DNA of 64,000 bases from Thalia democratica (Eukaryota): NCBI GenBank assembly GCA_965202585.1, contig OZ241826.1:75764001-75828000 (forward strand). Reading direction: 5' to 3'. The notes under the pieces are model-generated. The model had not been told where the DNA came from. It saw only the letters and a program-made list of their open reading frames with translations, and did no database searches. Positions within the stretch are counted from its first letter, which is position 1; each line of letters opens with the position of its first letter. Below, piece by piece: positions 1 to 64,000 of this stretch. The position numbers and the translations under genes were made by a program.

Positions 1-3000
1 TAGATGAACACGATGTAACAATTTTTTGATGGAAATAAAATTCGTAAACTAAATACAAAATTTGTAATAAATTTTCAAAATGTGTTTTTTAATCTTTACC
101 CAATAATTAGTAATTTAAATTATCTAGAAACTTAAGTTCATGATAATCTGAACCGCACGTTCATCAACAACAGTTCAAGCGACCTATTTTTATAGAAATT
201 AGGACTCATCAGGCAGACACAATCAATAAGATACATTATTTCAGTCGAACTACAAAGCTTATACCAAAGCTAATGGTGGAACTTCTTGTTTTATGTAATT
301 TTTATCATTTTTTGTAACTTTTTTTGAACTACCAGTTTTTTTTTATAAAATCTAGAAACTCCAACATAGAACTTTCTTATATTCGTTTTAAATTGTTCAC
401 ATTGTGTTTGTGTGACAATTAGCCACATGTAAAAAAAGTTGAGCTTAAAACTCCACGGTCGCAATTTTCGGATCCCATACGTTTTGCATTGGGGTGGTTT
501 TTCGAAAATTGGTTGGTGCCAAGGTGAAATGTTCTTAAAATCATCTAAAGTTTGTACAAAGTATTTAAATGTTATTTCCAAAACATAAAAATTTTTCCAG
601 GTGGAAAACCAAAAGTAGCTGTAAAAATAAGCACCCTAGTCTGTAGGCGTGATGGAAATTTAAAATATTTCTTTTATTATGTTTCTGTTGTTTTCCATAA
701 GTTCATGATGCTAAACGACTATTATCCAATGAAAATAGCATTACTGACGACAGGTGTGGGCTTGAATATTAATTACGACGTCATTTTCAAATAAGCCGGT
801 ACAACAAAGCTTGTAATTTTTTATTGCAAAGTTGTAGAATAGCATAAAATATTAAATGTTTAGGCTTTGCTGATGGTCTGAGCTCATATTTAGAAGCTTT
901 TAGAAGACCATTACCGCATTATCGAAAAGTAATTTTTGTGAAAATATCGAAAAGTAATTAATAACAATTTCGCTTTCAAAACTTAATAAATATATTCATT
1001 GATAAAAAGAAGCATGCACTAAAAAAGTTATTTTTTTCTTATAAAATTAGTTTATCTCATGAACTTTTTTTTTAATATTTATACCAAGCTCTTTTAATTA
1101 AAATTTGTTTGATTTAGTTATAGGTGAAAAATACAGAATGATAAATGCCTGCAGTTAAGTTGACAACAACAAAACTTGAAACTAACAAACACTAAAGTCG
1201 TACCCATTTAGAATTGTATGTTAAATTTTTATGAAAACTGTTTGTTTATAGAAGATCAATAACCAGCAATGAAAACGATATTTCACGCTTGACTTGCTTT
1301 AGTCTTATAATAACAACCACTCGTTTTATTATAAAAGCATTGGCAGTTCTCAGAAACAAAGACAGACGGTAGTAGGGGTTTTAATTAATAACGAACTTGT
1401 ATAAACGCTCTTGTTAATGACAGACAAATTAATGAAACCGCGCTGTGAGCACAACGCAATCTCGAATACACGTCGATTATACTTTCAGAAGGCGCTGGCA
1501 GTTTTATATATAAGCTTTTAATGAACAGTCTTGCATTCTTCTATTGTTGCTCAAGCTGTGTGGTTTCAAATTGAAGGCGATCATGTCTGTGCATTAACAC
1601 TGTCGTGATTACCTAATGTGCTGGCTCGTTATGTTTGGAAGTAGCCCAAAAAGTTTTTGATATCAACCGTAGAAAAATTCAACTGTCATTCAGAGTATAT
1701 TTGTCAACAGAGGCATCTTTGTTTGTCGCCAGACACGACTTTAAAGAATATTTAAACTCGAAATCACCGCGGTCTAATAGGCGATATTTATAGACTGTAT
1801 TTGCAGACTGTATGTTTATTGTAATTTATTCTGCACATTTTATATGCATATTTTTGTAACAAACCACGTTATCGTTATTCGTCAAGAATTCGATACACTA
1901 TAATATTCATGCATGAACTTTGAGTGGACATCATTGTAGAAAAATACAATGACAGTTTTTTTTACTAAATTTTGTATCTTGGAAAAAAATTAATAAATCA
2001 TTAATTTATAAAACTTTAATTTTGAAAAGAACAAAACTTTTGTAGTTGTTATAACATATACTTTTAACTAAAATAGCGAAAAGTTATACTGTATTTAAAA
2101 TTTTTTAGATAAACTTTAAAAATGTTATTTCAGTTTTAAAATATAAAACTACTTTCATTAGCCAAAATTAAAGCTTGACAGTCTAAGTACTACTTAAAGC
2201 CACTTTATAACCTCATAGATAAAATCAGTGGTATTTGTCATCTATAATCTAAAGTAAAATTGATCAAAACTTAATTTTTAAGTCATTAGGCACCTAGCTT
2301 TCGGTTTAAAATACTTTAGTTCACTCCTAAACCAAGGTCATATCAGTTAAAATATGTTTTATTCTATATTCGTTTGTGGAACTAAGTAGTTCTTAAATTT
2401 TTGGATTGTTACTATATTGAAGACTTTTTATATCAATAAAAAGTTATTAAATTTAAATGTAAACTAGCCTCTTTTGTAACCGAAATAACTGGTGTACCTC
2501 CAAAACGAAAACGTTCAGTTGGATGGGTCTCTTGGATTAACCAGGGGTACCTGGAACTAAAGTACAAAAATAAAACATGAAATTTATGTATTTTATTAAA
2601 TTTAAGGTGGTGAAAAAAATTAGATAAAATTGATAAAAATTTCATTCTTAGAATTTGTATACAAAAGCTTATTCTAAGCCAGTTCGAAAAGCATTGACTT
2701 TCGTATTGTAGAATTTGATACGTTAGGCTTACAGTAAAATGGGTTGGCATCCAAACTTTACACTATTGCGTCTAAAAAAGGCCTATATAGCTTTGAAAAT
2801 ACACAGAAAGGTTTGAGAATGCAGAAATAAACTGCCACGCCGTCTAAGCTGTGAGCAATCTATTCCAATTAAGTTGGCTTATGACGGATCAACAGCTAAT
2901 TATCTGTCCTGCCAGCAAACCACTGCCATCTAGTAAACAGTGCGTTTCATTCATGAGAGCGAGTTTTCGCATTTAGTGGCGCAAATTCGTGTGAAGATAA

Positions 3001-4340
3001 AGATCTTCAGCTAAGTTATTACGTCACAGTAAGAGATTGAAACTTGATTATTAAGTAACATTCAATCATGTCACAAACAAGTCGCAAAACATCGCGCCGT
3101 CCCCTTAAATCTCCTTATCTCCAATACAAATCGTCTGTTGTTGAGCAAAAAAAGCAATTAGTTTTGCCTTGTGACTTAAATAAAGAAATTATGTAAAAAT
3201 ATGCTTCAGACTCTAATAGTTGCACAATCCTAACATATTTCTGACTTTTGAACTAAGTTTGTAAATTCAAGTGTTTAATCAAAGTTCTTTTTTAACACTT
3301 AAAAAGTCTTTGATGAGATTAAGCTGCTTAAGTAATTATCTGAATTGAAAGAAATGTAGGCAGTACTTATAAACTGATTAATGCACGATAGATAAATATT
3401 GTTAACTGGCAACAGTTTAATTGAATTTACAAACTTAGTTCAAAAGTCAAAACAAATATGTAAAAAAATTTCTACTTATTTTTGTTTTTTGTTCTGTTTT
3501 AACATCATGTCAAATACTTTAGGCTAATTAATTACGTACTATACGTAATAAGTCTTACCCTGATTATATCAAGTGTTTATGTATCTTCCACCAAGTGAAA
3601 ACATCAATGTTAAAGTTTTTGAAATTATGAACTACAAGTTTTCTTTTACCTTAAACTTTGAATAAGAAGCTGAGTTTTTTAATGACATAACTTATTTGAA
3701 ATTTTAAAAAAATTGTTAGGAAAAACCTTTTAAGAGAGATAAGTTAATTTAAGTCAGAATATTCAATCCTAAAAGTAGCTGGTTGCGGTTGTAATTATAC
3801 TAGAAGCTGATCAAATAATTTTGCTCGGATAATATGAAAGCCATCTTAATATGACGTATTTATAATGTGTGCAGATGTTAAAATAGTTTTGTGGTAATAT
3901 CCAAGCAAATGGCTTTTGTTGAATAGTTTTTTCCAGTTTTTTAAATAAGCTTTTTAAATAAACTTTTAGGAATGACTGTATTTTTCCGAGTATTTTTTTA
4001 TTCACCAATTTGATTCAGAAAATTTATCTAAACTATATCACGAATGAAATAAACCTGATAAACGTTTAATAAGTTTATATAACTTATTACAATTTAAAGC
4101 GGCAAATAACGTTCCGTTTTAAAAGACCGCTTCAAAAAATCAACATTTTGTTAAATATTTTCAACGTATTTTTTGAACTTGAAGACTTGTAATTTTTTTC
4201 AAAGCGTTTCGAAAAACTATGTACTTATATTGTACTCTGTACGCCCTAAAACTCGTAAACGTTTCTCCATCACAAAAACGCCTAAACTGTACAATAATCG
4301 CATAAATGCTCAGAAATATTTTAGCTAATTTATATCCGAT
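1..4340 (-). pseudogene. Copy D (5' part only): decayed duplicate
   Basis: Remnants of exon 61050-61137 at ~2468-2556 (in-frame TGA, donor gt->gc) and of exon 63530-63577 at ~3558-3608. The 62466-62596 homolog is absent. Bases 195-260 match 16250-16320. Confidence 0.75.
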
Positions 4341-7300
4341 AAACAAGTATTCAAAATATAGTAGAAGCTAAGTTAACTTTTCAATTTTAAATAAAAAATG
4401 TTTATAAGATCTTTTGACGCTCAAATTATAAACAGTAATTAACTTCGCACCTTAAACTTTCAAAAAGTTTCTGTTTAAATTTCTATCTATATTAATACTT
4501 AAAATGCTAAATACAAAGAATGTTGTTGTATTTTCAAAAACTTCTTTGAAATGAACTTAGTTAACTTTAATTAAACCTTCAATATTTCAAAAGGTAGATA
4601 GTTTACTTTTAATCAATCATTAAACTATTTAACGTTGCAAGTAATTAACATAAATTAATGTTTGTAAACATAATATATGTCGGTTGTTTTTTGGCAAGTT
4701 GTATTAGATTAAATTACTAAATTAAACTGGTGAAAGTTTAGATATCTAATATAAACTTTAAGTAGTCCTATGTTTTTAGAATATGCAGTAAAAGTTGCTT
4801 GATAACTTGAAATTTATTTTGAAACTTTTTTTAAAACAACAATTAGAAACATTAATCAAATTTAATAATTTGACGAACACTTTGAGGAAAATAGTTAATT
4901 TAGTATCCTAATAACCATCCGAGTACACAGAACTGGTGCTCATAAAACACTTTTCAATCACCTGGATTTTTTACGATTTCTTCCTACCGCTTTGTTTTAA
5001 AGACTCTGCCACTAGACAGAGTACAAAAAAGAAAAGTGAAAAAAATATTAGGTTTTATTTGAACAGATCAAGTAGAAGATGTATTAGTTATCTAACAGAC
5101 TAATGGTTAAGTTAAAAACAATTAGCAGATAGCATTGTCATTGGTATTCTCCGTACAGTATATGCATTACACAACATTATTATAGTAATACCCTCAATAC
5201 GTCTCTCCAATGTTTTATATAATTTTTCTCATCACTTTTGGCGCTAAGGTGTTACACCTTCGACAAAGCAGAGTTTAACTACTTAACTTTTAATTAGTAC
5301 AAGTGAAACTTTTTAACATTATACACCTTTTTTATATACTCATGTTTTTATCATCTAATAAAATCATTGTTTTTGAATAATTTACTTTCGCTATATTAAA
5401 TAAACATGTACTGTTAATTAGTTTGTCTGGCTACCTACTTTTGTAATAGTTTACCTACCGTATCATTCAATGTTTGAGAATAATTATTTTGTTGAAACTT
5501 CGACTAAAAAAAGTTTTTTGCTTTGATTTCATAATACTCTAATCTAAAACTTATCAAAGATTTTATATTGTAAAAAAATCTAAGTAAATATTTCAGCTTT
5601 ATTTTGTTTGTTGTTCATTATGTAAAATCAGTTTAATAACAATGATGAAAAACGTACGAAACAATCATTATAACTGAAAACAAATACATGTTACATTGAA
5701 AAACTTTAAAGTATGTACACTACATATAAATACATAAGTATTTAAATATCAACTTAAGCAATGGTTACTACAAAGTTATGAATTTTGATTATGTTTTAAA
5801 ATGTATAACCCCAGTGTATTGCTATTTACAAAATTTCGAGGTTTAATAATAAGTTAAGTTCAGAAAACAGCTTTTATCAAAAAACGTTTAACGCTAAAAT
5901 TGTCTATTGTCTTTCCAGACTTGAATAAAATTAGAATAAAAAAAGTTAATTTTCTAAATAGGGAGTAACCTATTTAGCATAAACTCGAAACCTAAAAACT
6001 ACTACACTTTATTTTATTCAAGTAGTCACAAAATACTTACATAAGTGGAAAAAAAACCTCGTTATTTTAAATTTCATTAGTGTTAAGGTTTTGATTTAAA
6101 ATATATGCGGTTTGAATATGATTTCAAAGAATAAGAATTAGCAATCAAAGGTAATGTTTTGATCTTACCGCATCAAAGTAATTATATTCGTAAAAACAGT
6201 GCAGCTATGCAAACACATTATTATTAAGTTTTATTAAATTTTCAATCTAAAGAAGACTAGGTGCTTAAGCCATCTTGAATAAAATGGGTATTATAATGAA
6301 AAAGCATTTCGTTTTCTATCAGAACAAAAAATGCAGCTTAAAGTTTTGTAGATTAAAATGGAATTTAATGCTAAAAAGTTCGCTGAGTTTAAACTGGTTC
6401 AAACTTCTTGATTTTTAAGACTACAGTATAGCGAGATCAAAGTAAACAATCTGTAACAAATGGGAAAAACAAGCCAGTTCAATAGAAATTTAACTGGTTA
6501 ATCTCGCAAAATTCTGACTATTGCGGCTCTTTTCATAAACAAACAGCTTGTCTAGTGGTAAGTATTTAGTAATCAGATTTTTACGGGTGGATTTCACACT
6601 AAATTATTCTGCAAACTTCAACAATTTATGATAACCACAAACTGTTTCCCAAAAATATGTTTTTGGTAGCTTCATTCCTTTTTACCAAAAAAAAGACTTT
6701 GATATCAAAAAAGTCTTTTTGGATTGTTTTGAAAAGTTTTAAAAATTATTAAAATGCTGTCAAGTTTTACTTATGGTATTTAAACCGGTGTGAACGATTA
6801 AGTTCTTTTTTTGGTTTTTGTTTGTAGAAAGCTTAATGAATATTTTTCCAATTTTATAATCTTTTAACATTAAGTTTTTACATAAATTTCTGAAACTAGT
6901 CAACAACATAGTCATCAAAAAACTTAACATATCACTTGTTTTAAGTATAATGATGATTATAAAATCTTAAATTTAAGTATTAAATACAATTCATCTAATT
7001 TATAACGATGATGTAAACTAAAAACTTAGTATACTGTCTGAATTTTAATAAAAAAATTCAATATAACAACCTTTATTTTGATTTGCTCGTTTTGTTAAGT
7101 CTGTTTTATTAAGCCTATATTTACATTTTAAACTAGTAGGTAGTAATTTTATGTAAAAAAGTTGCGTGTTAAATTAAAAAAAACTCTCATTTGGGTGGCA
7201 AACAAAACTATAATGATTAAATTAAACCAAAGGGTCGCTCCTATCAAAAGAAACTTATGGCATAAATTTCTAATAAGTGACAGTTAATGAATATTTTTTT

Positions 7301-8239
7301 CATTATAATGCTATTATTTAATAAAAAGTAGTACCAAAGCCAAATCGATGTGTTTTTTGTTTTAAATTAATGATAATAGTTCAATTTTTTTTATTAGGCA
7401 CGAACTCTAAGTCCATACAAACTTTTAAATAAGTATATGTCTTTAAAAAACTACTTATAAAATTTTAACTACACTGAAAAAGTATTACTCTTAAAACTAA
7501 AAACTGATATAAATTCTAAAGTAGTTATCAAAAAACCTATAATTGCTAATGTAATGTAGTCTTATTAATTATTTTTAGCCAGTTTAAATTAAATTTATTT
7601 ACCTTAAGATTTATTTTTTAAACTACAAAGATTTGTTTTTAGGCTAAAGAACTTTATCAAGTTTTAAGCTCTGTAAAAATCATTATGGTTGTTATAAATT
7701 TTACTTTTTATTTGTTGTGAAATGTTTTACTAGGTGCTTCACTTTGTTCAAGCCATTAATTCTGATTAAAATTTTACATGTAAAACACTCTAAAAACTAT
7801 GGAGTCAAGTCACATGTGTATTGCAAAACACTAAACAAAAAATTATTGTAATATAATAGTTTGATAAATATTACAAAATGTTACAAAAATTACCATAATA
7901 ACTTAAAAATCATTGTAAGTATAAAATGCAATTTTGAAAACACAACACACTTGAAACTTGATATATTTTTGTAGTTTAACAAATATGGGATGTATATTTT
8001 AATATTTTGCATTTGTATTGTACAAAAAATCGACTTATAAATCTTAAACGGTTGATTGGTTGTAAAAAATTATTAAATGTGTTTATGAAAAAATTTTGTT
8101 ATGTTAAAGAATTTTTGATAAAATTTATTTTGAAACACGCTACTTCAAATTAATTACAACGAAAATTAACAATTCAATTAAGTTAAATGATTTAGAAATA
8201 AAATTACGTGGCAACTTTAATTGAAATTAGTCAACAAGC

Positions 8240-9656
8240 GGGCAGGACTTTTTATGGGTAGTTTTAAATATTGGGTACTTTTAATTGCAGCATTTTTGCA
8301 AAAAAAAGTACCCAATATTTTGATAATGTCATTAACTTTACTTTGGGTACTTTTGAAGCTTAAACTTTCTTAACAAAACAAAACTGCTGTATAGGCCTAT
8401 GATAAATTCACTTTGTTTTATTTTTCTAAATATAAACTATAACTGAAATAAAACAATAGAATGTAAGTAAACATTTCCCTATGTTATCAAAATTGTAGAA
8501 ATATAATTTTCAACTTTGATATTTTTTGTGTAAGTACAATTTTAAATTTAAGCACAAGTTAAGATATTGACTTTTTAAATTTTTGTTTTATAGTTTATTG
8601 ATGACTTTAAGTTATCATATTTTATCAAAATTTCATTATTTTACATGTAGAAGTAGTTTAAAAATTATAGATTTTTAGGTGATTTTTGTTTTAAATACCA
8701 GATTTTTTCAATTTTTTTAATTTCACAAGTTCAAGGTTTTTCCAGTTTTTGTTTAAACTGTCAAGTTCCTGGGTTCCAGGTGTGTTGGCAACCCTGCTCA
8801 AATTTTAAGGAAGTATTCCTTTCAATATTTATTAATAAAAAGAAAAAAGAAAAAAAGTTGACAATTAAAACCTACTGTACTCTCCTATTTTAATGTTACG
8901 TATCAAAAATTTGTTTTCGTATAAAAAATCTGTATAAAGCTACTTGTAGTTTAGATTAAAATTTATAAAGTGACATCAACTTGTAATAAAAGTGATCTAC
9001 ACCCTTCCTGTACCCAAGGTGACTCCTAAAGTTTTTTTTGAAATTTTATTAAATTTTTCTAAATTTAATATATTTTTAAAAATGCAAGTCTTAATTACTT
9101 TTTTACAAAAAACAAGTGATCAGAATTTCAAGTCATTCTAGGATTTTAGACAACATTCTAAGATTTCCATAAGCATCTAGGTTTGATGGCCATCCTGTTA
9201 GCTTTATTTCAAACTAAAAAAAGGTAGCTTTTATAGAAGTAGATAACTTATGTACAACTAGTTCAAATTTTTCTATGACTGAAGTTCATTAATAAACTAT
9301 AAAACAAAAATTTTAGAAATCAATAGCTTAATTTGTTTTTAAATTTAAAATTATAACTTACACAAAAAATATCAAGGTTGAAAATTATATTTTTACAATT
9401 TTGATAACATAGGGAAATGTTTACTTACATTCTATTGTTTTATTTCAGATATACTTATTTTTATATTTAGAAAAAATAAACAAAGTGAACTTATCATAGG
9501 CCTAGACAGCAGTTTTGTTTTGTTAATAAAGTTTAAGCTTCAAAATTACCTAAAGTAAAGTTAATGACATCATCAAAATATTGGGTACTTTTTTTTGCAA
9601 AATTGCTGCAATTAAAAGTACCCAATATTTAAAACTACCCATAAAAAGTCCTACCG
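8240..9656. mobile_element. Long-TIR (foldback/Mutator-like) non-autonomous element, 1417 bp
   Basis: About 370-bp inverted arms (8240-~8612 vs ~9277-9656); flanking 8-bp direct repeat caacaagc (8232-8239, 9657-9664); empty sites at ~25480 and ~41530. The superfamily assignment is tentative. Confidence 0.85.
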
Positions 9657-10071
9657 CAACAAGCAGTCTAAAACATGACGTAACTATAAGAAGCTTCGTT
9701 AGAATGAATTTCCGTCTAGATTGATTTCAGCGATTTTTTTATTAATTACTACTCATTCCACAGGAGCTAATCAACGGTTTTGAAATAATATAGCAGGCAT
9801 ATAAATTCATTTTCAAAAGGCTTGACTCCAGAGTATAGAATAAAAAATTTTTGGAACAATCTTCAAAAAAAATTCAAATTACTTGTTACAGCAATCTTTA
9901 AATAATCGTTTAACCTTTGAGATTAAAAAAAAATTTCCAGCTTAATTTTAGATTGAAATTTAAATTAGACAATACGTATTAGTTCTTAAAAGTCAAAATA
10001 AAGTTTTTTATAGTTCAATCTAATATAAATTTATTTATAATTAGACAAAAATTGCTTTGTAGAGTTTAATG

Positions 10072-10419
10072 CAGGGTTTCCCAAAGTGGGCCATGACAGA
10101 TACTCAGGGGGCCATGAGCAGCAAAGGGGGAAGAGGGGGGGCCATGAGCAGTAAAGGAGCCACAGGGGGGGCCAAGAGGCCATAACTTGAAACTTACACT
10201 AGATATTCTTGAGTTGCAGATGAAGAGCAAAAAAAAAAAAAAAAGGTCTTACGTGTATTTTATGGCAGTTTAGAAACTTACACTAGGTGATGAAGAGCAA
10301 AAAAAAAGGTCTTATGTGTATTTTATTGTAGTTTATGAGTAATCTATATGTTGAAGGGGGCCATTACTTTTTCAAACTCTTTAAAGGGGGCCATTAGCAA
10401 AAAAGTTTGGGAAACCCTG
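10072..10419. mobile_element. hAT-like MITE (348 bp), unique to the unit upstream of copy D
   Basis: 14-bp perfect TIR cagggtttcccaaa/tttgggaaaccctg; 8-bp TSD gtttaatg (10064-10071, 10420-10427); repeated GGGGGCCAT subterminal motifs; empty site at ~25785. Confidence 0.92.
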
Positions 10420-12738: not shown

Positions 12739-12930
12739 TATCAAAACTACAAAGCGTTACGGCGCGTGAACTTGACAATGAAATTGAATTATCTAATTGT
12801 CAGACAAAAGAAAGGCGTTAGTGTTTTCCGAGTAGCAACTTTAGAGTTGTCTTCTTCATCAAATTGACATTAACACCCAGCTGCGAGTTAAGCAGAGAAT
12901 AAATAAGACCGGTAGACAGTTTCAATTTAA
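12739..12930. promoter_or_regulatory. Ultraconserved non-coding block, putative enhancer; copies at 28852-29040 and 51029-51220
   Basis: 105 bp identical in all three copies (12739-12843 = 28852-28956 = 51029-51133), intronic in copy A. Contains TGACA/TGTCA, ACAAT/ACAAAG and TAAT-type motifs. Function is inferred. Confidence 0.6.
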
Positions 12931-13880: not shown

Positions 13881-13989
13881 CTAGTAATCAGATTATCAAA
13901 AGTAGAAACTGATAATTACGTTTATATTTCAATTTGGAAATAGACGTAATTACACACAGAATGTATCAGAATTAAATTCGAGATATGCA
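13881..13989. promoter_or_regulatory. Conserved non-coding block with a P3-type homeodomain palindrome; copies at 30013-30121 and 52070-52177
   Basis: TAATCAGATTA is invariant, and the TAATTACGT-N22-ACGTAATTA inverted pair is present in all three copies. Confidence 0.55.
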
Positions 13990-54500: not shown

Positions 54501-57500
54501 TTTAATTTGTCTATAAATAAAAATTAAATTATAAATCTTAAAAACATTTTCACAAAACTTTTATATCTTATTTAAAGAAAAAAATGAATGTATGATCTGG
54601 GAAAAGAATTCCTTAATAAGAGAAAAAGCCACAAAACAAATTACTATCAGCGTGATCATAAAAAACAAAATTCCTGTACAATTTGTATGTGGCTAAACTC
54701 GTGATTCTTTATTTACACTTGCTTGTAATTGATTTCAAAAGGATGATCTAAGCTTTATCTACAATTAAAATGTTTAAATAAGTCACGTAATCGAATTTTC
54801 CAGATCAGCTTTTATAATTACCAATAATCTCTTTGGTTTAAAAAGAAAACTTTTTATTTAACTGTAAAACAAATATTACCGATCAATTTTTTTTTTATTA
54901 AGTTTAAAACTTAAAAAACGTTTTTGCAGTATTACTAGTTGTTATAAAAAAGTATTAAGTAATTGAATAAGATTATTAGAATAGCTTTTTTAAATCAAAT
55001 TATGTAAAACTTTTGTATTTTAGATAATATGAGATAAAAATTATTCATATTCAATAGACTTAAGTTTTTCTTTTTTGTATACCATATATTAAAAGTAAAA
55101 ATAAAACTAACCTAGGAACTTTTAATTTACAAAATAATTTTTTTATGTTTTTATAAAGTTAAAACGGTTTTGGAAGTATGTGTACCTAGTTTAAGTTCAG
55201 GAAAATATAAAAGGTTTAAAAGTATCAATCAGAAGTCATAAGCTTTATAAAACCTCACGTACGAATAATAAAAATAACAAACAATGCAACCACTAAACTA
55301 CAAAAATGCAAAGAACATAATTTTTTTTTTCTTATGTCATAAGGCTTTTATAAAAAGTCGAGATGTCTTGATTACTCTCGAGATAGTATCGATTATTAAA
55401 AATGATGACTTGCGGTGTTTGATAAAAGTCTGTGTTTACTAAAATATTAAGTTTACTTTGTAAAACCTTATATATATATATATATAATGTCATTTTACAA
55501 TATGAAATCATGGATATATATCAGGGTTACCCAAAATGGACCTTTTCAGAAATTTAGGGGGTCATAAGCTGCAAAGGTCATTATTTTAAAAGTTACTCTA
55601 GATATTCTGGTGCTGATTGTTAAGAGAAAAAGAAAAGATCTTAGGCATATTTAAGGGTGGTTTTGAAACTTATAATAGATAGTATGGGAAAATTCAGAAA
55701 ATTAGAGAGCTATTAGTTGTAAAAGGCCATAATTTGAAACTAACACTAGATATTCTGGAGTTGATGATGAAGAGCAAATGTTATTTTTTGCGTATTAAAA
55801 GATATTTATATAAGAAATCTTATCGAAGGGGGCCATAGTTACTAATTTCTTTAAAGGGAGTCCTAACTTAAAAAAAAGTTTCGAAAGCTCTGGTTAATAT
55901 CTTATAGTAAAATTTACATTTATAAGTTTTTTAAAACTGTTTAAATAAAAGATTAATTTTGGATTGGTAAACTAGAAAATTTCAAGTACACTACACTTTT
56001 AATGTTTACACCCTCATATTTTCTATTTTAAAAAACGAAAAACACATCATCTTTACTGAAAGTTTATGTTTCGAAAATCAATAAATCAAAACAGTAGTAA
56101 TGCGTTTAAACCTTCAAAGGAAGTGTTGTGTTGTCTTGGGATTTGCCGCCTGTGATAAAAACAACAACTTTGAACGCCTCCCTTCTCGAATACTCGAATC
56201 CACTAAGATAAGCGTAGTTGAGCGCCAGTCCCGTCATTCGCTTACCGTTATCGTAGCTGTACAATATTCACTTTTTTTTTTAAAACTTAGCTTTGAAAAA
56301 AATCCTATTTAAATCAATTTTTGTATGTAAACAAGAGTGAATTTAAAAAAAAATAATTAGACTAAGTCACTAACAATATAAATAGGATTACTTGATACAA
56401 ACAGTACAAATAACTTAAACTAACTATAAGTGTCTCAATCGGAGCAACAGGTCGTTTTTTGTGGTGTAAGTGGACAATGGAGCCACGTATCTCGCCTCGT
56501 CCGAGTACAAAATGATGCCAATTCTGGTCGCATGCGGGGCCACTACATAACCTTTCACAAATGACAGCAAAAAATTTTGACTCAATTCGTCAAATTCCGA
56601 CTGTTTTATTCTATTAAAATGATAATTTATTTACGCTGTAGCCATAGATTTCTAATTTATTGACAAATAGATATTATTTTAAATATTTTGATAAATCTAG
56701 CAATTAATTTTAATCCAAAACATTAATATCAAATAAGTTTATTAAAAGTTTCTATATATAAAACAATAGTTTTCTTTATTTTAAAGTAACTCTGTAAATT
56801 CATTAAATTCCTGTTTCGTTTTTTAATTTCTTATTTTTGTTCCAAAACCTAAAATAATCGTAGAAAATTCCAACAGGAATAAAGTATTACATAACTCTAG
56901 AAGCGTGCAAAACATCAAAGGTGCTGATAATATCTAAAACAATTCGTTCTAAAAATTTTATTTTTCAGAAAACTTATCTTTTTTAAACCATTAACCATAA
57001 CATATATTTTCATCTTAATTGTTTCAATTGCAGTTGTTTTTGGAATGTTAGTATTTAAATTTTTGAAAACTTTTTGAAAAATTAACAGAACGTATTAAAA
57101 ATTTATCAGCATTTTATGCAGAAAGTAATTTTAAGAAACAACTACATTTAAATAATGAAGTTTAACAAAACCAACAACAAATTGTAAAATTAATTTTAAT
57201 TAACGTGACACATATATTTTAAAACCTATCAATTTCTTTTTTTTTTACAGTTTTTCAAACTATTTCTGAACATTTTTCAGTTTAAAAAAACATAGTAACA
57301 AAATACTACTTATAAAATTTTTGTTCAATCATTAAAGATTATGACGTCATACTTGGAAGTGTCGATGAGGACGAGAATGTCGGCGGTGATGCTCGCGCAC
57401 GACATGTCAAACTCAAACTTGTACTCGGTTGATGACGTATTCATACCGTATGACGTCATAATCACTTCGTACTCGGTACTCTCCAGATTTTCAAGTCGCA

Positions 57501-60500
57501 CTCTTTCTGCAAATATTTTTGATCTACTAAACATCAAAACATTTAAAACTTTTCTTAAAAATTAACACACCTGTTTTAACATTTTTAATGCTGTAATGCT
57601 GCTGATCACCGTTTAGAGTTTTGTACTTTATTGAGTAGAAATCAATGAGACCTCGGGGGCGATTCCAACTGATCTCGGCAGAGTAGTGATGATTGATGCC
57701 GAATCTGATGTCTTTTGGTGGATCAATGGGCGACAAAAACATATCTGGTTTTAATTTTTTAATATATTTCCTAGTTCTCAACTTTAAATGGGTTAATATA
57801 AACTTGAAAAACAAAACTGTACTTTGATATGTGTTTACTTGCTTATCATATTTTATAAAACAGCACAACATACTAAGAAAAAACATTTTAAAGATCAAAC
57901 AAACATGTTTAAAACATACTGAGGAGCTTCTCACGGAGTCTTTTATGAACGTCCTTCCACAAACTGCACAATCCGTGAGACTTTCTCTTGTAAAAAGGTC
58001 GGTATTTCTCTCCGGACGCACTCGTCAGTTTTTTCAATTGTTTCTGTTTTTGACAAGCTTTCAATTAGCAAGAATTTTCGTTAATCGTTGTACTTGCGGT
58101 CTTTATACACGCGTTAAACAAATTAAATTAAAACAATTTAATGTGTCGTAAAGTTAGTTTAAACGAGCTCTTATTTACTAGAACGATATCAAAAATGTTA
58201 GATAAAATAATTTACATGTGCAAAAATTTTGGCCATTACCATGTCGTATTCAAATTCATTTTGACAAAAAATAGAAAGTGATGATTTAAAATTATTTGCA
58301 TAAGTACTCTAAAGCAAAACTTATAACTATTTTTTACAAACACTAAAAAAGTTATACCAATCTTAGTTTTATTAACTATTATGTAGTTAACCACGGATAA
58401 ATTTCTTGAAAAAATTTGGAGCAACTTTGACAGTTTATCAATTTTAAAAGCTATTTAGTTTAATTGGTCTAAAATAAACAAAGTTTTACCAATTATTAAA
58501 CAAACAAAATCCTTTTTAAAAACTAGCGTAACAAATTGACAAGCAAAAACCGGTTTTCACCTGAATATCAATTTCTTAGTACAATGTACTTTGGCACAAA
58601 AGTTTTTTAAATATTACTAACGTATGAAGCTCCGTCATAACCAACTGTGAGAAACACTGTTTGTGGTCTGATCGAAAGTAGTTTCAGTTCTTCAGAAAAA
58701 TCATCCTTAGAAGGTGAGGCCAGAACTAATACAATCACTTTAGCAACATCTCTTCTCACTCCATAGTTGTACTCATTGACTAAAACCCTTTCCCGAGCAA
58801 AGTTTAGGGCTTTTCCTAATGCTAATTGCCTGCCCGGTTCATTTTGCATATATTCTAAAGCTGTTAAAAATTATAACCTTTTAGCATTACTTAGCATGAT
58901 AAGCTTCTATAGTTATTTGTTAATTATTTTCACAGCCTAAAGTTTTTTCGCTATAAGTTGTGTTAAGTTAAAGGTAAATAATATGTAACTATAAAAATTA
59001 ATAGTTCTTTTATTATCTTGTTTTATTCTATAATATGAATTAAATAGCAAAATTTCAACAATTTTCCAGCGTAGTAGAAAACTAAACTGTTAAGTATGTT
59101 CAAATTGCATTATATAAAAAGTACTACGAAGTTTAGAATTTGTACTTATTCCAAATGTTAAGTAATAACTTTTTTATCAATAAAACTTATTTTGATATAG
59201 TTATTATATTTAGCACACGTTTCAAATAAAAATCACCAATGTACGCGTATTGGAAAATGTAAAAATATTTTTCTCATTTGTTTTCCATAAAGTCGTAATG
59301 CTAAACCATTATTTTCCAATAAATAATCACTACCGTCATTACGACGTCATTATGACTTAAGTGGTAACGCTAAAGCTTTTAACTTTTTTTTTTTGGAATA
59401 TTGTAAAATAATATCATTTATTAAGTATATTGAGGCTTTGCTGACGGTCTGAGCTCATATTAAGAAGCGTTTAAAAGGCTATTACCGCATTGTCGAAAGT
59501 GCTGTTTTAATAAAATTGAATAAGTTTAAAAACAAACCTTGTTTTCCAAAAAAGATAAATATATTTTCAGTCATAGATGAAAAAAGAATGACTTAAAAAG
59601 TTTAGTTGAATTACTTATTTTAACCATAAAAAATATGTTCTCAATAATATGTTTACTTAGATCATTATGTTAAAACTTTCGTAGTACTATTTAAACGTGT
59701 ACAGTTCAATTTTATAAATGTTTAAAAATTTAGATAGTAAAAATAAATTTAAAACTAATATAGCCTACTATAGTCATCCCCTGTGAGATTTGTAAGTTTT
59801 TTTTGCTAAACTGTTTATTTATCCGAGAGAAATAACTAGCAGTCGATATGATGTTTCACGCTTGATTTGGATTAATCTTATAATAACAACCGCTCAATCT
59901 ATTACAAAAGTATTGGCAATTCTCAGAAACAAAGACAGACGGTAGTAGGGAGGTTTAATTGTTAACGATTTTTATAATGACAGACAAATTAATGAAACCG
60001 CGCTGTGAGCACAATGCAATCTCGAATACACGTCGATTACATTTTCAGACGGCGCTAGCAGTTGTATATATAAGCTTTTAATGAACAGTTTGAAATAACT
60101 TCAAAGAATAAAGAAGTCGCTTGCAGTCTTATATTGTTGCGCACGCTGTGTGGTTTCAAATTGAAGGTAATCATACCCGTGACACTGCATTGACACTGTT
60201 GTGATTACCTAATGTGCTGACTCGTTATGTTTAAAAGTAGCCCACGCTTTTTTCAATATCGACTGTGAAAAAATTCTACTGTCAATAAATGCAAATTTGT
60301 AAAGAAAGGCATCCTTTTTAGTGACTCGACGCGACTTTGAGGAACTTTTAAGATCGAAACTACTGCGATCTAGTGGCGATTATATGTTTAATTAGAAGTA
60401 CACATGTGTTTTTTGACGGTTTTTTTCTCATTAATGTATGTATACTTTAAAAAAAGTTGTGTAAACATTCGTCGTCATAAATTCGTTACACTTAAATTTT

Positions 60501-63500
60501 CATGATTGAATTTCGAATGGACAATGGACATGCTTGTACGAATATACAATGACAATTTTATTAACATCTTTTTTAACTTTAAATGAACTGCTGATGCATT
60601 TATATACAACATTTTGATATTGCAAAGTGTAAAACACTTCTAGAAGTTATAAGCTATATTTCTTTATGCAATTGCAGAAAATTATACTGCATTTTAAAAA
60701 TTTATAAATAAAGCCTTAAAATTTGTATAGAAACTTAAAAATATAAAATATTTTTATCTGCCAAGTTAAAAATTTGACATTATAAGTACTACTAAATGCC
60801 ACTTTATAACCTCATAGATAAAATCAGTGGATTTTGTCATCTTAAATCTAACGTAAAATTGATAAAAAGTTTATTTGTAGCTCATTAACACCTAGCTTTC
60901 GGTTTAAATACTTAAGTAAACTCCTTGACCAAGTTCATAGAAGTAAAATATTTACTATACTATACAATTTTTTGAAACTAAGTATCTTTTATTTTTTTTT
61001 TCTAATTGCAACATTATTGGAAATTTATTAACCTTAAATATAAACTGACCTCTTTGGTAACCATAGTAGTCAGTGTACCTCCGAAATGAAAAGTCTACGT
61101 GGGGTGGGTCTCTTGGATTTATCAGGGATATCTGAACCTGAAGTACAAAAATATACTATGAAACTAATACTTTGAATAATTTTCAAGTAGGTAAAAATTT
61201 TGAAAACTAATTTTGTTTTGAAAATATGTACACTTAGGTTTATTTTAAGCCTGTTCGGAAAGCGTCAAGTTTTATATTGTAGAAATTGATACGTAAAGCT
61301 TACAGTATAATGCGTTGGCATCTAAGCTTTACACTTGTGCGGCTGAAAAAAAGTTTAAAAGCTTGGAAAATGCAGAGATAAACTACATTGCCGTCTAAGC
61401 GGTGAGCAATCTATGTCAATTAAGTCGGCTTATGACGGATCAACAGCTAATCATTTGTCCTTCCAGCAAACCACTGTCATCTGGTAAACAGAGCGTTTCA
61501 TTCATAAGAGCGAGTTTTAGCGGGAGTTCGTGTAAAGATAAAGATCTTCAGCGAATTTATGACGTCACAGTGAGAGATGGAAACTTGATTATTACGTAAC
61601 AATCGATCATGTCACAAACAAGTCGCAAAACACTGTGCCGTCCCCTTAAGTCACCTTATCTAAAACATAAATCGGCTGTTGTTGAGCAAAAAAGCAATTA
61701 GCCTTGCTTTGTGAGAGCAAATGAAATCAATTGAGGTTACGTTTCGTTTAAACATCAATTTTAGCTTAATTTTTAAACAGAAACCAAACAGTTTATAAAT
61801 ATAAATTTAAATATTTTTTTTACATTTCGAAGTGTCAGCGATTTAACTTTGGTGTTTAGCTAATTAAAGATTATTTTGCACAAAAAATAAATAATATATG
61901 TATAAACTTTGCAAATCTAGTTTTTATATTACGGTTTTGCATTTAAATTTTATTTCTCATTAAACTTTATACTTTGAATCTTCATAATAAAAAAGTTATT
62001 ATTTTATAAAGTTTTTGAGAAACAAGCTGTAGGGCTTCTTTTTTTTTAAATTTTATTGATAAGCTTAAGTTAAAACTTGTGTTTTTAATTTTTAATTTAA
62101 AACTTTTATATATCTACTAGCTACCACCACTTGTTATTATTAAAACGTTACTTTAAATTGCCTCATTTGTATGTTTAAAAAACCCTGTTTGTAATACAAA
62201 ATTACCATAAAGCTATATTATTAAAGTAGCTACTACTTTAAGTATAACAGCTTTTGGTAAAGTAGAAACTTTTTAGTTTAGTTTTAAAAATTCAAATGAT
62301 GTAACCTTTGGCTACATAAAAACAAAATTTAATTTTAGAAACTTAAAGTTAATTGAATTATAAGTTTATACAAACTTTGACTCCTTATGTCAAGTTCTTT
62401 ACGATTGTCGCTTACTGTACAACTCTAACAAAATAAATTTGCTAACAAAGGAGTTAATAACTAACTTTTCTTCCACCGGTAACATTAAAGTAAGTGGTAA
62501 TATTTCGAAGCAAACACTTAATTCCTCTCAAATCAGCGTCATTATTTGACGATTTATCCACAATGTATAATACGTCTAAAGAGAGGTCTATCAATTCTAT
62601 AAAAATAAGCTCTATAAAAGTCATATTGTTTTCTGAACTAAAAATTAAAAAAAATTTTTTTAGGATTTTATAAAATATTTTAGTGTAAGTTTTAAATACT
62701 TTAATTTTGAAAAAAAAATCCTGCAAAACTAATTATTTTTAATTGACTTATTTGTAAAAGTTACAGTTATGAATTTTCTAATTACCATAAATTTAGATGC
62801 TCGTAAAAAGTTGTAAAGTTTATTTTCCTTTTCGAACAGTTTTGTACTAAAATACAACGTTTCTATTTTAATTTTTGTTGTACCCAAAACCTAGCATCTT
62901 AATAGCTAAATTTTATAACTTTTTATTCAACAATATTCCAAATTACTAAAATAAAGTTCTTATAATAAGAGTTTATTTACTCACTTTTAAATGTTTATAA
63001 AAAATCGTAATTTGAAAAAAAACTGATTGAAATTGTACAATTAATTAACATCAGGTTTAATGCATTTTCTAAAAAAGTAGACAGCTGTTTAGTTTTTATT
63101 TTAAAGTTAATCCTTAAAACAATATCAATTAAACAGATTATCTGCAAAAATTAAATACCAATTGATGTATAAACATTACTTCATACATTATTGCACAATC
63201 CTAACATATATCTGACACGAATATGTATTTAAAATGCTTTCAAATACGTATGAGCTACGAATTTATAATTTAAAGCTTTTGCTTGTGGTTTTTATTTATT
63301 TAGATGATTACTTTAAGCAGCTTAATCACATCAAAGGCTTTAAAAGTGTAAATAAAAGTAATTTGATTGAAAACTTATTTAAATAAGCAGCCGGTTTATT
63401 AAAAGAAAATCCTAAGAACTAAGTTTAAAACAATTTTTAAATCTAGTTGTTTTTGTGTATTCACTTTTAAATTTTTTTGCTTGACGTCAATCACAAGTAA

Positions 63501-63577
63501 GCTAGAAAACTACATATAAAAAAACCTACCTGGAATGTATCCAGTATCTATGTCTCTTCCACCGAGTAAAGATAACT
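43017..63577 (-). CDS. Copy A: apparently intact multi-exon gene for a secreted-type extracellular matrix protein with 4 vWA and 5 FN3 domains (collagen XII/XIV-like N-terminal architecture, no collagen helix); 5' end outside window
   Basis: Manual splicing, all GT-AG with matching phases. Exons 5'->3': 63530-63577, 62466-62596, 61050-61137, 58622-58860, 57920-58043, 57571-57744, 57353-57506, 56425-56610, 56112-56256, 53963-54218, 53592-53751, 52658-52764, 50405-50560, 50039-50161, 49493-49758, 49163-49356, 48776-48929, 47044-47210, 46648-46815, 45998-46167, 45809-45934 (donor least certain), 45367-45508, 43922-44109, 43451-43609, 43196-43381, 43017-43075 (ends TAA). About 4070 nt coding with no internal stop. 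Domain calls come from recognising consensus motifs, not from a database search. Confidence 0.88.
45809..49356 (-). CDS. Copy A vWA domain 3, divergent FN3 domain 5 and Cys-Cys linker (6 exons)
   Basis: VDIAFLVEISPSLMEEEFISTRNFLKSLAGAFD...KTFKHARSGVPRIMFLLAT...HRYVLSSYDQL (vWA); LQADTSYYFVLEAHSGRNFSAAITVPFHT (FN3 second half); a 63-nt intron at 45935-45997 precedes WNHLFTNKEVMLPNGQCCAVNK. Confidence 0.8.
47490..48324. mobile_element. Tc1/mariner-like non-autonomous element (835 bp) in a copy-A intron
   Basis: 25-bp TIR cagtacactaccgcttaagtacgca vs tgcgtacttaagcggtagtatactg (1 mismatch); TA on both sides; repeated gtgcgtactt subterminal motifs; no transposase ORF. Confidence 0.9.
49493..50560 (-). 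CDS. Copy A FN3 domains 3 and 4 (3 exons)
   Basis: PSPKRTEV...VEIFWQPPDSVRYVSQYQVSVY-...NKLYPGTEYEVWVLAMYGRGIKSKP; PKPANFRMSKAYETQVQLSWD...YYVQV...VENLIPGKSLTATLQ-ASLGSDISS. Confidence 0.9.
52658..54218 (-). CDS. Copy A end of vWA domain 2 and FN3 domain 2 (3 exons)
   Basis: RLKKDGALTLKIEV...LKAVQHKISDVIC (vWA C-terminus); PSPINLHVSDVTNTTIEVTWEQ...ITGYDVTI and FKLWDLLPGHEYNIVVTATG (FN3 consensus). Confidence 0.9.
55522..55892. mobile_element. Older, degraded member of the same hAT-like MITE family in a copy-A intron
   Basis: Ends cagggttacccaaa / tttcgaaagctctg; internal ggccataatttgaaactaacactagatattctggagttgatgatgaagagcaaa matches 10178-10230; absent from B/C. Confidence 0.75.
56112..57744 (-). 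CDS. Copy A FN3 domain 1 and first part of vWA domain 2 (4 exons)
   Basis: PIDPPKDIRFG...AEISWNRPRGLIDFYSIKY...VRLENLESTEYEVIMTSY (FN3), then CASITADILVLIDTSK-IKQSEFDELSQNFLLSFVKGYVVAPHATRIGIILYSDEARY...-MTGLALNYAYLSGFEYSRREAFKVVVFITGGKSQD (vWA). Confidence 0.9.
57920..63577 (-). CDS. Copy A N-terminal linker exon plus vWA domain 1 (5 exons)
   Basis: Spliced: LSLLGGRDIDTGYIPE-LIDLSLDVLYIVDKSSNNDADLRGIKCLLRNITTYFNVTGGRK-VQISLINPRDPPHVDFSFRRYTDYYGYQRA-LEYMQNEPGRQLALGKALNFARERVL...GVRRDVAKVIVLVLASPSKDDF...VFLTVGYDGASY-KQLKKLTSASGEKY...KRLREKLL. vWA secondary-structure motifs appear in the expected order. Confidence 0.85.
59330..59490. promoter_or_regulatory. Conserved intronic block; copies at 745-900, 17120-17245 and 33290-33450
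   Basis: ttacgacgtcatt and ctga(c/t)ggtctgagctcatatt are conserved in all four copies. Confidence 0.4.
59925..60245 (+). promoter_or_regulatory. Conserved promoter-like block (TATA-like element, splice-donor-like site, hairpin); copies at 1360-1650, 17630-17960 and 33850-34170
   Basis: aatgaaaccgcgctgtgagcaca...tctcgaatacacgtcga is followed by tatatataag (60065) and cagtt, then gaag|gtaatc. Present in all four copies; orientation is inferred. Confidence 0.45.
60800..60865. promoter_or_regulatory. Conserved AT-rich intronic block; copies at 2200-2270, 18510-18575 and 34720-34790
   Basis: aacctcatagataaaatcagt...tttgtcatct...aatcta...gtaaaattgat is nearly invariant in four copies. Confidence 0.35.
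61285..61710. promoter_or_regulatory. Conserved ~430-bp non-coding block, putative enhancer; copies at 2720-3180, 18995-19460 and 35200-35650
   Basis: High similarity across all four copies; TGACGTCA in three copies and several AGATAA/TTATC motifs; intronic in copy A; no consistent ORF. Confidence 0.5.
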
Positions 63578-63761
63578 CTGTTAAAAATTTATAGCTTTAA
63601 TAACCTTTAACTCAAAACTTTAGTTTTTATCTTAGTTCATACTTTAACCTTTAACTTATAACCATATAAAGAGTTTTTTAATGACATATTAATTTAGAGA
63701 TATTAAAAACTGTTTGATACAACCTTTTAAGAGCGCTGAGTGATATTAAATCACATGTTTC

Positions 63762-63885
63762 AATCCTAAAAGTAGCTGGTTGCGGTTGTAATTATACTAG
63801 AAGCTGATCAAATTATTTTGTTCGAAAAAATGAAGGCCATCTAAATATGACGTATTTATAATGTGTGCAGATGTTAAAACAGTTT
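63762..63885. promoter_or_regulatory. Conserved non-coding block; copies at 3765-3885, 20965-21085 and 36963-37085
   Basis: tcaatcctaaaagtagctggttgcggttgtaattatactagaagctgatcaaat is identical in three of the four copies. Confidence 0.5.
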
Positions 63886-64000
63886 TGTGGTAATATACAA
63901 GCTCATGGCTTTTGTTGAATAGTTTTTCGGTTTGATTAAGAAAGTTTCTTAAACAAACTTTTTGTATGACAACGGTTTTTAATGATTGTTAATATTTTTC

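What the first reader, a model, noticed from the sequence alone, without database searches (positions are those of the whole stretch)
1..64000. Tandem gene array in which exons decay while the non-coding blocks are kept: possible enhancer array built from dead gene copies
Seen: B, C and D have broken exons (frameshifts, stops, lost donors), yet about ten intronic and intergenic blocks remain nearly identical to copy A. The three multi-kb segments missing from B and C (copy-A ~44.9-51.0, ~52.2-54.6 and ~57.8-59.1 kb) contained 14 of the 26 exons but none of these blocks, and two breakpoints closely bracket the 51.0-52.2 kb segment holding the two best-conserved blocks. Established: neutral pseudogene DNA should decay at similar rates in exons and introns, so inverted conservation points to selection or homogenisation acting on the non-coding parts. 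Inference: the dead copies persist as multiplied regulatory cassettes (enhancer dosage for copy A or a neighbouring gene) or as hosts of a nested non-coding transcript.
Basis: partly seen in the sequence, partly recalled or inferred. Interest (0 to 1): 0.82.

Follow-up and report, generated by a model that had tools for sequence, protein, structure and literature searches.

The report
Gene-conversion islands in a tandem cluster
At least ten copies of a matrix-protein gene, most of them broken, share short islands of similar DNA (exons plus about ten non-coding pieces) that look like leftovers of copy-correction between the copies, not enhancers kept by selection; only one 125-base piece still looks protected.

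Summary
The array is real. The window holds four minus-strand units of a VWA/FN3 gene, part of a cluster of at least 10 units over about 190 kb. B, C and D are broken (frameshifts, stops, missing exons). About ten non-coding blocks are 81-93% identical to A, against about 67% for the DNA around them, and they occur nowhere else in the genome.

The claimed inverted conservation does not hold. Shared exons are as similar to A as the blocks are (0.864 vs 0.860).

Between copies that split recently ({B,C,E1} and {E3,E4}), the blocks have diverged almost as much as their flanks (0.15-0.16 vs 0.17-0.19). The block tree is a star with near-zero internal branches. Invariant sites do not cluster, and base composition is drifting towards the AT-rich background. 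Third codon positions are as similar as the blocks.

My best reading is past gene conversion confined to homology islands, followed by near-neutral decay. This is a known kind of pattern. An enhancer array of dead genes is not supported for most blocks.

There is one exception. A 125-nt core of block nc1 (51018-51142) is identical over about 105 nt in A, B and C, and stays conserved between the dead sister copies. Its function is unknown, and no RNA data exist.

Other first-reader notes of this scan report similar conversion patchworks at other loci of this genome.

The parts
44651..64000 (-). Unit A, the most complete VWA/FN3 gene. It runs on to about 65200 outside the window, where a signal-peptide exon lies at 65033-65140.
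   Evidence: Pfam VWA and FN3 hits on minus-strand ORFs. ORF list. Self-BLAST.
43170..44117 (-).
   Evidence: V4a (45336-45539) matches VWA profile positions 1-33 only. V4d aligns weakly with the C-terminal end of another VWA (E=0.01). The rest is motif reading, so this is an inference.
28421..44650 (-). Unit C, a truncated and broken copy.
   Evidence: Shares the 5-bp deletion in exon V2b with B. Lacks V1a, V1c, V2d, F2 and V4a.
12342..28420 (-). Unit B, a truncated and broken copy and flank-sister of C and E1.
   Evidence: Net indels of -1, +1, -5, -1 and -2 in five exons. B-C flank identity is 0.82-0.84.
1..12341 (-). Unit D (it continues upstream of the window to about -6100), a differently truncated and broken copy.
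50995..51231 (-). Non-coding block nc1, 89-94% identical in 10 units. In gene sense it starts with a branch-point, pyrimidine-tract and CAG motif and ends with TTTATAAAC.
51018..51142 (.). nc1 core, 125 nt with 7 CpG. This is the one element still conserved between dead sister copies. About 105 nt are identical in A, B (12739-12843) and C.
   Evidence: Each of the 10 copies differs from the consensus at 1-10 positions. B-C identity is 0.950 in the cores against 0.868 outside them. Alignment.
51290..51436 (.). Non-coding block nc2.
52045..52261 (.). Non-coding block nc3. About 60 nt of it are cut off in B, C and E1 by their shared deletion.
   Evidence: 151-157 of 217 nt retained.
54642..54784 (.). 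Non-coding block nc4.
56128..56274 (-). Conserved block that is a coding exon (VWA2, exon V2c).
   Evidence: Open frame and Pfam VWA positions 73-119.
56409..56543 (-). Conserved block that is a coding exon (VWA2, exon V2b).
57330..57747 (-). Conserved block made of two coding exons (FN3, then the FN3 end plus the VWA2 start) separated by a short intron.
   Evidence: Present only in this cluster.
59426..59500 (.). Non-coding block nc8.
59876..60246 (.). Non-coding block nc9.
60764..60925 (.). Non-coding block nc10.
61064..61148 (-). Conserved block read as a coding exon (VWA1, exon V1b).
   Evidence: Open frame in several copies. No Pfam test was run on this exon, so the domain assignment is motif reading.
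61275..61723 (.). Non-coding block nc12, 449 nt with 21 CpG in the consensus.
62546..62612 (-). Conserved block read as a coding exon (start of VWA1, exon V1a).
   Evidence: Open frame with a VWA-start-like motif. No Pfam test was run on this exon, so the domain assignment is motif reading.
63742..63940 (.). Non-coding block nc14. It contains TATAAATA in gene sense and lies in the first intron of gene A.
21374..21524 (.). Non-coding block nc15 as it stands in unit B. The A copy, 64174-64326, lies just outside the window.
44966..50890 (-). A-only segment holding about 10 exons (FN3, FN3, VWA3, a probable further FN3, and the start of VWA4). No other unit of the cluster has it.
47448..48369 (.). 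929-bp stretch with a 93% identical inverted copy in an intron of unit D (about -3011 to -2086). Probably a transposable element.
14550..17340 (.). Tract where B and C are 95-98% identical, against about 84% elsewhere. This looks like a recent long conversion or exchange between neighbouring units.

Best explanation
The window is part of a cluster of at least ten units of a secreted VWA/FN3 matrix-type gene. Unit A is the most complete. B, C and D are truncated pseudogenes.

In every unit the exons and about ten discrete non-coding islands share a much more recent common ancestry than the intron DNA between them. The most likely cause is interlocus gene conversion (concerted evolution). It kept working only inside islands that were still similar enough to pair, and those islands were probably seeded by exons and regulatory or intronic elements of the ancestral unit.

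Homogenisation faded at about the time of the latest duplications. Since then the islands have decayed at close to the neutral rate in the broken copies and somewhat more slowly in A.

Shown here: the shape of the divergence. Inferred: conversion as its cause, and any original function of the islands.

One element, the 125-nt nc1 core, departs from this and still looks constrained in most units.
For: 1. Shared exons and non-coding blocks are equally similar to A (0.864 and 0.860), against 0.669 for flanks.
2. Flanks give a clear hierarchy. {B,C,E1} are 0.81-0.82 identical and {E3,E4} 0.83, while all other pairs are 0.65-0.72. In the blocks every pair is 0.80-0.87, sister copies included (0.84-0.85).
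3. ML trees. Flank terminal branches of the recent copies are 0.10-0.12 and their stems are 0.104 and 0.086. Block terminal branches are 0.083-0.117 (A 0.063). Block stems are 0.004 for {B,C,E1} (topology-constrained tree) and 0.034 for {E3,E4}. So the block-to-flank rate ratio is about 0.8-1.07 on recent branches but 0.04 and 0.39 on the older stems.
4. Only 2 sites are derived and shared by exactly B, C and E1, out of 1194.
5. Third codon positions differ by 16%, the same as the blocks, against 28-35% for flanks of the old pairs. This is hard to explain by protein-level selection.
6. Invariant sites are not clustered. The longest run invariant in all copies is 12 nt.
7. Block GC is 0.35, the substitutions imply an equilibrium of 0.28, and the window as a whole is about 0.26 GC.
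8. Nearest neighbours change from block to block. In nc14, B is closer to D than to C or E1 (23:9 and 26:10 sites). In nc15, A-B differ at 15 sites and B-C at 28. E3-E4 differ at 10 sites in nc10 but at 90 in nc12. A 67-nt block is 100% identical between A and the adjacent inverted unit within a 68% background.
9. Blocks defined without using A-D come out at the same coordinates.
10. A precedent exists: a non-coding motif kept by gene conversion, with raised G+C, across the BEX/WEX/GASP cluster (PMC1274310).
Against: - The AU test does not reject the flank topology for the block data (p=0.15).
- The PHI-type test is borderline (p=0.054).
- The runs test gave 7 pairs at p<0.01, but poorly aligned copies confound it.
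- So direct proof of conversion tracts is thin, and the star tree could also come from strong past selection followed by relaxation.
- It is unexplained why the islands have the same sharp edges in all ten units unless they once had a function.
- The nc1 core does not fit neutral decay.
- Flank divergence of the old pairs is near saturation, so its branch lengths are rough.
Confidence: 0.55

Rival explanations
1. Selection only. The blocks are cis-regulatory or other intronic elements of the ancestral gene. Purifying selection kept them in every unit while the units were active, and they were released when the units died. No gene conversion was involved.
For: - The block edges are discrete and the same in all 10 units.
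- Spacing between blocks is conserved.
- The block branch of A is the shortest (0.063 against 0.083-0.117). Its departures from the consensus are also fewest (58 against 66-103).
- The AU test does not reject the flank topology.
Against: - It needs almost no change in about 1300 nt of non-coding DNA on the {B,C,E1} stem (0.004 against 0.104 in flanks). Yet the intact copy A evolves at about 0.2 of the flank rate overall.
- At A's rate about 40 derived sites shared by B, C and E1 are expected. Two are seen.
- Third codon positions are as conserved as the blocks.
- It needs relaxation at the same time in two independent clades.
- No motif-like invariant runs are present.
Confidence: 0.2
2. The dead units persist because their non-coding blocks act as multiplied enhancers for A or a neighbouring gene, or because they host a nested non-coding RNA.
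For: - The nc1 core (51018-51142) is identical over about 105 nt in A, B and C and keeps 7 CpG.
- It is more conserved between the dead sisters B and C than the DNA around it (0.950 against 0.868).
- The copies differ from the consensus at only 1-10 positions each.
- The blocks are specific to this cluster and are not repeats.
Against: - For the five 5' blocks tested (nc9-nc15), sister copies diverge about as fast as their flanks.
- Variation is evenly scattered and composition is decaying.
- One deletion cut into nc3, and conserved non-coding DNA was lost along with the deleted segments.
- There is no Rfam match, no covariation and no unusual folding energy (z = -0.47 and -0.01).
- Differences in a second sample fall inside the blocks of copy B without a visible deficit, though coverage of the block interiors is poor.
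Confidence: 0.1
3. Artefact. The array or its patchy similarity comes from assembly or polishing errors in a repeated region.
For: Contigs of the read sets break inside the blocks and depth rises there. This shows that short reads cannot separate the copies in those stretches.
Against: - Contigs from runs of the same organism match copy-B-specific flanks with 0-9 differences.
- A second sample (X3) carries the same copy at about 97% identity.
- The copies differ by 13-35% in their flanks, far too much for collapse or mis-polishing.
Confidence: 0.03

Closest known systems
Concerted evolution of a non-coding element by gene conversion in the mammalian BEX/WEX/GASP cluster (Winter and Ponting 2005, PMC1274310)
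   Same: A cluster of tandem paralogs in which a non-coding motif has an evolutionary history separate from the surrounding sequence. It stays similar across members, and G+C is raised in the homogenised parts.
   Different: There it is a single 5' UTR motif in live, expressed genes, with independent events documented in several mammals. Here there are about ten islands per unit, most units are pseudogenes, no second species is available, and conversion is inferred mainly from the shape of the tree.
Intronic gene conversion between tandem paralogs, for example the introns of the human X-linked red and green opsin genes being more alike than some exons (from my own knowledge, not checked here)
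   Same: Non-coding parts of neighbouring paralogs can be as similar as coding parts, or more so, because conversion homogenises them.
   Different: In that case whole introns are homogenised between two functional genes. Here only short islands are, within introns that are otherwise about 67% identical.
Conserved non-coding elements or enhancers under purifying selection
   Same: Discrete blocks of 70-450 nt with sharp edges, richer in GC than their surroundings, at fixed positions relative to the exons.
   Different: Between recently split copies most blocks evolve at about the flank rate, and they lack clustered invariant sites. Only the nc1 core behaves like a constrained element.
Arrays of non-coding host genes with conserved intronic small RNAs, such as snoRNA host genes (from my own knowledge)
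   Same: Repeated units whose exons are dispensable while an intronic element is kept. This would fit the nc1 core.
   Different: The C-box-like motif is not conserved and there is no terminal stem. There is also no Rfam hit, no covariation and no excess folding stability.

Membership tests
Concerted evolution / interlocus gene conversion | Similarity between paralogs is independent of their duplication order (star tree in the homogenised parts, hierarchy in the flanks) | tested here: met
   Blocks are 0.80-0.87 identical for all pairs. Flanks are 0.81-0.83 for {B,C,E1} and {E3,E4} and 0.65-0.72 for the rest. The {B,C,E1} stem is 0.004 in blocks against 0.104 in flanks.
Concerted evolution / interlocus gene conversion | Mosaic tracts, or significant disagreement between trees of neighbouring segments | tested here: inconclusive
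   The triplet test is significant for nc14 (23:9 and 26:10), and A shares a 67-nt perfect match with the adjacent unit. Against that, AU p=0.15, PHI-type p=0.054, and the runs test is confounded.
Concerted evolution / interlocus gene conversion | Silent sites of exons are homogenised as well | tested here: met
   Differences by codon position are 10.3%, 9.0% and 16.0%. The third-position value equals block divergence and is far below the 28-35% of old-pair flanks. The exon frames are my own reading and are not backed by RNA.
Concerted evolution / interlocus gene conversion | Paralogs group by species when a second species is compared | not testable with these tools
   No related genome is available. 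The second sample (X3) is only about 3% different.
Enhancer or conserved non-coding element under purifying selection | Lower divergence than neutral flanks between copies of known recent common origin | tested here: not met
   For the 5' blocks nc9-nc15 the sister-pair divergence is 0.15-0.16 against 0.17-0.19 in flanks. Terminal branch ratios are 0.8-1.07. The feature is met only by the nc1 core (0.950 against 0.868).
Enhancer or conserved non-coding element under purifying selection | Clusters of invariant positions (binding-site-like) beyond chance | tested here: not met
   Across the 5' blocks the longest run invariant in all copies is 12 nt. The shuffled mean is 7.7 and the shuffled maximum 17.
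Enhancer or conserved non-coding element under purifying selection | Open chromatin, enhancer marks or reporter activity | not testable with these tools
   No such data can be reached, and no RNA runs exist for this organism.
Intronic small-RNA gene (snoRNA or miRNA) in a host array | Match to a known family, or conserved boxes or a hairpin with compensatory changes | tested here: not met
   No Rfam match at gathering score, and only chance-level matches at E up to 10. Only 2 of 59 predicted pairs show a compensatory change, and the covariation term is +0.15. Folding z-scores are -0.47 and -0.01.
Dispersed repeat / transposable element | Many copies scattered over the genome | tested here: not met
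   The five blocks searched (four non-coding blocks and the exon pair 57330-57747) each have 7-13 copies, all within C1:75.736-75.927 Mb or on contig C502.
VWA/FN3 multidomain extracellular protein gene | VWA (PF00092) and FN3 (PF00041) domains, plus a signal peptide | tested here: met
   Several exons reach or approach the Pfam cut-offs for VWA and fn3. A signal-peptide-like exon lies at 65033-65140 (read by eye). No full-length model or RNA support is available.

The most novel reading that the evidence does not exclude
The 125-nt nc1 core (51018-51142), possibly with nc3, is a functional non-coding element carried once per unit. It could be a protein-binding regulatory site, an internal promoter, or part of an alternative terminal exon. 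Selection would keep it even in units whose coding exons are dead, so the broken units would persist at least partly as carriers of that element.
Probability: 0.2. Interest if true: 0.6.

Novelty: new member of a known kind. Interest (0 to 1): 0.3.

Why it matters
The finding matters mainly as a caution. Blocks that look like conserved non-coding elements when tandem paralogs are compared need not be under selection. Comparing copies of known recent common origin separates shared history (homogenisation) from present constraint.

If the nc1 core proves functional, it would be a compact element multiplied along with a gene array and kept in dead copies. That would be worth a reporter or deletion test.

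The locus also gives a clean example, in an AT-rich marine animal genome, of homology islands with a star-like genealogy set inside introns with a hierarchical one.

Tried and rejected
- Dispersed repeat: rejected. The blocks occur only in this cluster.
- Missed exons: true for five of the fifteen conserved blocks (56128-56274, 56409-56543, 57330-57747, 61064-61148, 62546-62612). The other ten have stops in all frames, indels that are not multiples of three, and no long ORF even in the 10-copy consensus.
- Known RNA family or structured RNA: no Rfam match, no covariation and no excess stability. A C/D-box reading of nc1 fails because the C-box-like motif is kept in only 6 of 10 copies and there is no terminal stem (by eye).
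- Full-length homolog to guide exon mapping: the search returned only an 89-aa fragment and unrelated multi-FN3 proteins, so there is no protein-guided gene model.
- RNA evidence: no RNA runs exist.
- Reads of a second sample laid on copy B: it differs by about 3%, and records rich in block DNA show 4.1-4.4% against 2.8-3.6% elsewhere. But contigs break inside the large blocks and the difference list was truncated, so this is weak evidence.
- Difference alleles in that sample: they look like ordinary point changes, not imports from paralogs.
- nc1 core in JGI metagenome contigs: two exact-match scans found nothing.
- BLASTP between exons V4b or V4c and their VWA2 counterparts: nothing significant. 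The VWA4 assignment therefore rests on V4a (Pfam), a weak V4d match and motif reading.
- Whole-unit MAFFT alignment: too rough across the large indels, so BLAST chains and regional alignments were used instead.
Full report
WHAT IS THERE

The window is 26% GC and lies at C1:75764001-75828000 of an 802-Mb animal genome. Small shares of its words turn up in marine metagenomes.

Minus-strand ORFs carry VWA and FN3 domains. A signal-peptide-like exon lies just past the window end, at 65033-65140.

Self-comparison shows four tandem units: D (to 12341), B (12342-28420), C (28421-44650) and A (44651 to about 65200).

With 160 kb of added flank, the window proves to be part of a cluster of at least ten units over about 190 kb. 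There is a further unit Z upstream. There are five inverted units E1-E5, an inverted fragment next to A, and a 3.3-kb sub-repeat.

CHECK OF THE OBSERVATION

The three A segments absent from B and C are real.

B, C and D are broken:
- B has net indels of -1, +1, -5, -1 and -2 in five exons.
- C shares the 5-bp deletion in V2b and has no V1a.
- D has a frameshift and a stop in the signal-peptide exon.
- Exons V1c, V2d, F2a and V4a have no match in any of the three.

Sliding identity along A finds fifteen blocks of 60-450 nt at about 81-93% identity, within a background of about 67%. Five of them are coding exons. Ten are non-coding: they have stops in all frames, indels that are not multiples of three, and no long ORF even in the ten-copy consensus.

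The blocks are not dispersed repeats. The five I searched have 7-13 copies each, all in this cluster or on contig C502.

- The deletion shared by B, C and E1 cuts about 60 nt off block nc3.
- The 52.2-54.6 kb segment contains another conserved non-coding block, 53227-53293.
- The boundary at about 44.65 kb seems to split gene A. Its last VWA starts in exon 45336-45539 (Pfam profile positions 1-33). It appears to continue in exons at 44117-43170. That rests on motif reading and one weak match. BLASTP of the other two exons found nothing.

The 5.9-kb segment 44966-50890, with about ten exons, exists in A alone.

ARE EXONS DECAYING WHILE BLOCKS ARE KEPT?

No. B-A identity is 0.864 in shared exons, 0.860 in non-coding blocks and 0.669 in flanks. 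Exons and blocks behave alike.

ARE THE BLOCKS CONSTRAINED IN THE DEAD COPIES?

The flanks identify copies of recent common origin. {B,C,E1} are 0.81-0.82 identical and {E3,E4} are 0.83, while every other pair is 0.65-0.72. In the blocks those same sister pairs are only 0.84-0.85 identical. That is no closer than unrelated pairs, which are 0.80-0.87.

ML branch lengths say the same.

| Branch | Flanks | Blocks |
|---|---|---|
| Terminal branches, recent copies | 0.10-0.12 | 0.083-0.111 |
| Stem of {B,C,E1} | 0.104 | 0.004 (topology-constrained tree) |
| Stem of {E3,E4} | 0.086 | 0.034 |

Across all ten copies the block terminals span 0.063 (A) to 0.117 (E5).

So the blocks changed hardly at all while the flanks diverged deeply. 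Then they changed at roughly the flank rate.

Further points agree with this:
- Only two of 1194 sites are derived and shared by exactly B, C and E1.
- Invariant sites are not clustered. The longest run is 12 nt.
- Block GC is 0.35, but the substitutions imply an equilibrium of 0.28, close to the window's overall 0.26.
- Blocks defined from Z and the E units alone fall at the same coordinates. A is only slightly closer to those units than B, C and D are (0.155 against 0.174-0.186).

WHY WERE THE BLOCKS SO ALIKE BEFORE?

Selection alone would need near-zero change in about 1300 nt of non-coding DNA on the older stems. Yet the intact copy A changes at about a fifth of the flank rate.

Third codon positions differ by 16%, the same as the blocks and well below the flanks.

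Nearest neighbours also change from block to block:
- In nc14, B is closer to D than to C or E1.
- In nc15, A-B differ at 15 sites and B-C at 28.
- E3-E4 differ at 10 sites in nc10 but at 90 in nc12.
- A 67-nt block is 100% identical between A and the neighbouring inverted unit, within a 68% background.

B and C also share a 2.8-kb tract at 95-98% identity.

I therefore favour interlocus gene conversion confined to homology islands. A precedent is the non-coding motif of the BEX/WEX/GASP cluster (PMC1274310).

The formal tests are not decisive. AU gives p=0.15, a PHI-type test gives p=0.054, and a runs test is confounded by poorly aligned copies.

The shared sharp edges suggest that the islands began as functional parts of the ancestral unit. 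That is an inference.

THE EXCEPTION

Block nc1 contains a 125-nt core (51018-51142) with 7 CpG. About 105 nt of it are identical in A, B and C, and the ten copies differ from the consensus at 1-10 positions each.

Between the dead sisters B and C the cores are 0.950 identical, against 0.868 around them. This is the element another first-reader note flagged (s1-287251).

In gene sense, nc1 begins with a good branch-point, pyrimidine-tract and CAG motif and ends with TTTATAAAC. An alternative last exon or a promoter is therefore conceivable.

There is no Rfam match, no covariation and no excess folding stability, and no match in JGI metagenome contigs. Its function is unknown.

READS

No RNA runs exist.

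Contigs from the same organism match copy-B-specific flanks. A second sample carries copy B at about 97% identity, so the array is not an assembly artefact.

Differences in that sample show no visible deficit in records rich in block DNA. However, contigs break inside the large blocks and the difference list was truncated, so this test is weak.

VERDICT

The array and the blocks are real. The pattern is the known patchwork of concerted evolution in a tandem family, followed by decay. It is not an enhancer array built from dead genes.

The nc1 core remains an open and modestly interesting lead.

Other first-reader notes report similar conversion patchworks elsewhere in this genome. I did not check them.

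Noticed in passing
L009:501-10000 and L024 (window coordinates about 74500-88000): A 3.3-kb unit repeated about four times in tandem at 84-85% identity. Each unit holds nc3, nc2, nc1 and the exons V4b-V4d, and those exons carry frameshifts or truncations.
   Followed up: partly
window coordinates about 69600-163000 (L008, L009, L024-L033): The second half of the cluster is inverted relative to the window. It holds five further units (E1-E5) with the gene on the plus strand. E3 and E4 show no indels in the two exons checked, so one of them may be intact.
   Followed up: partly
window 47448-48369 and L010:6989-7914 (window coordinates -3011 to -2086): A 929-bp stretch, 93% identical and in inverted orientation, sits in introns of units A and D. 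It is probably a young transposable element.
   Followed up: no
window 53227-53293 and L008:9834-9900: A 67-nt non-coding stretch is 100% identical between unit A and the adjacent inverted fragment, although the surrounding alignment is about 68% identical. It looks like a recent short conversion tract.
   Followed up: partly
L008:1033-1140 (window coordinates 65033-65140): Signal-peptide-like first coding exon of gene A (it begins MKAAAAKISLLFF). Within the window and its 20-kb flanks, only D has a recognisable, broken counterpart; the more distant inverted units (E1-E5) were not searched for it.
   Followed up: partly
contig C502 of the same genome (about 4700-35300): A small contig carries further copies of blocks nc9 and nc12 and of the FN3/VWA exon pair (57330-57747). 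It may be an alternative haplotype of part of the inverted half of the cluster.
   Followed up: no
window 16300-22299: The second sample (X3) differs from the reference by about 3%. Part of those variants also appear as a second allele in the runs of the reference organism, which suggests very high polymorphism in this species.
   Followed up: partly
window 14550-17340 and 30700-33560: B and C are 95-98% identical here, against about 84% over the rest of the unit. This suggests a recent long exchange between adjacent units.
   Followed up: partly
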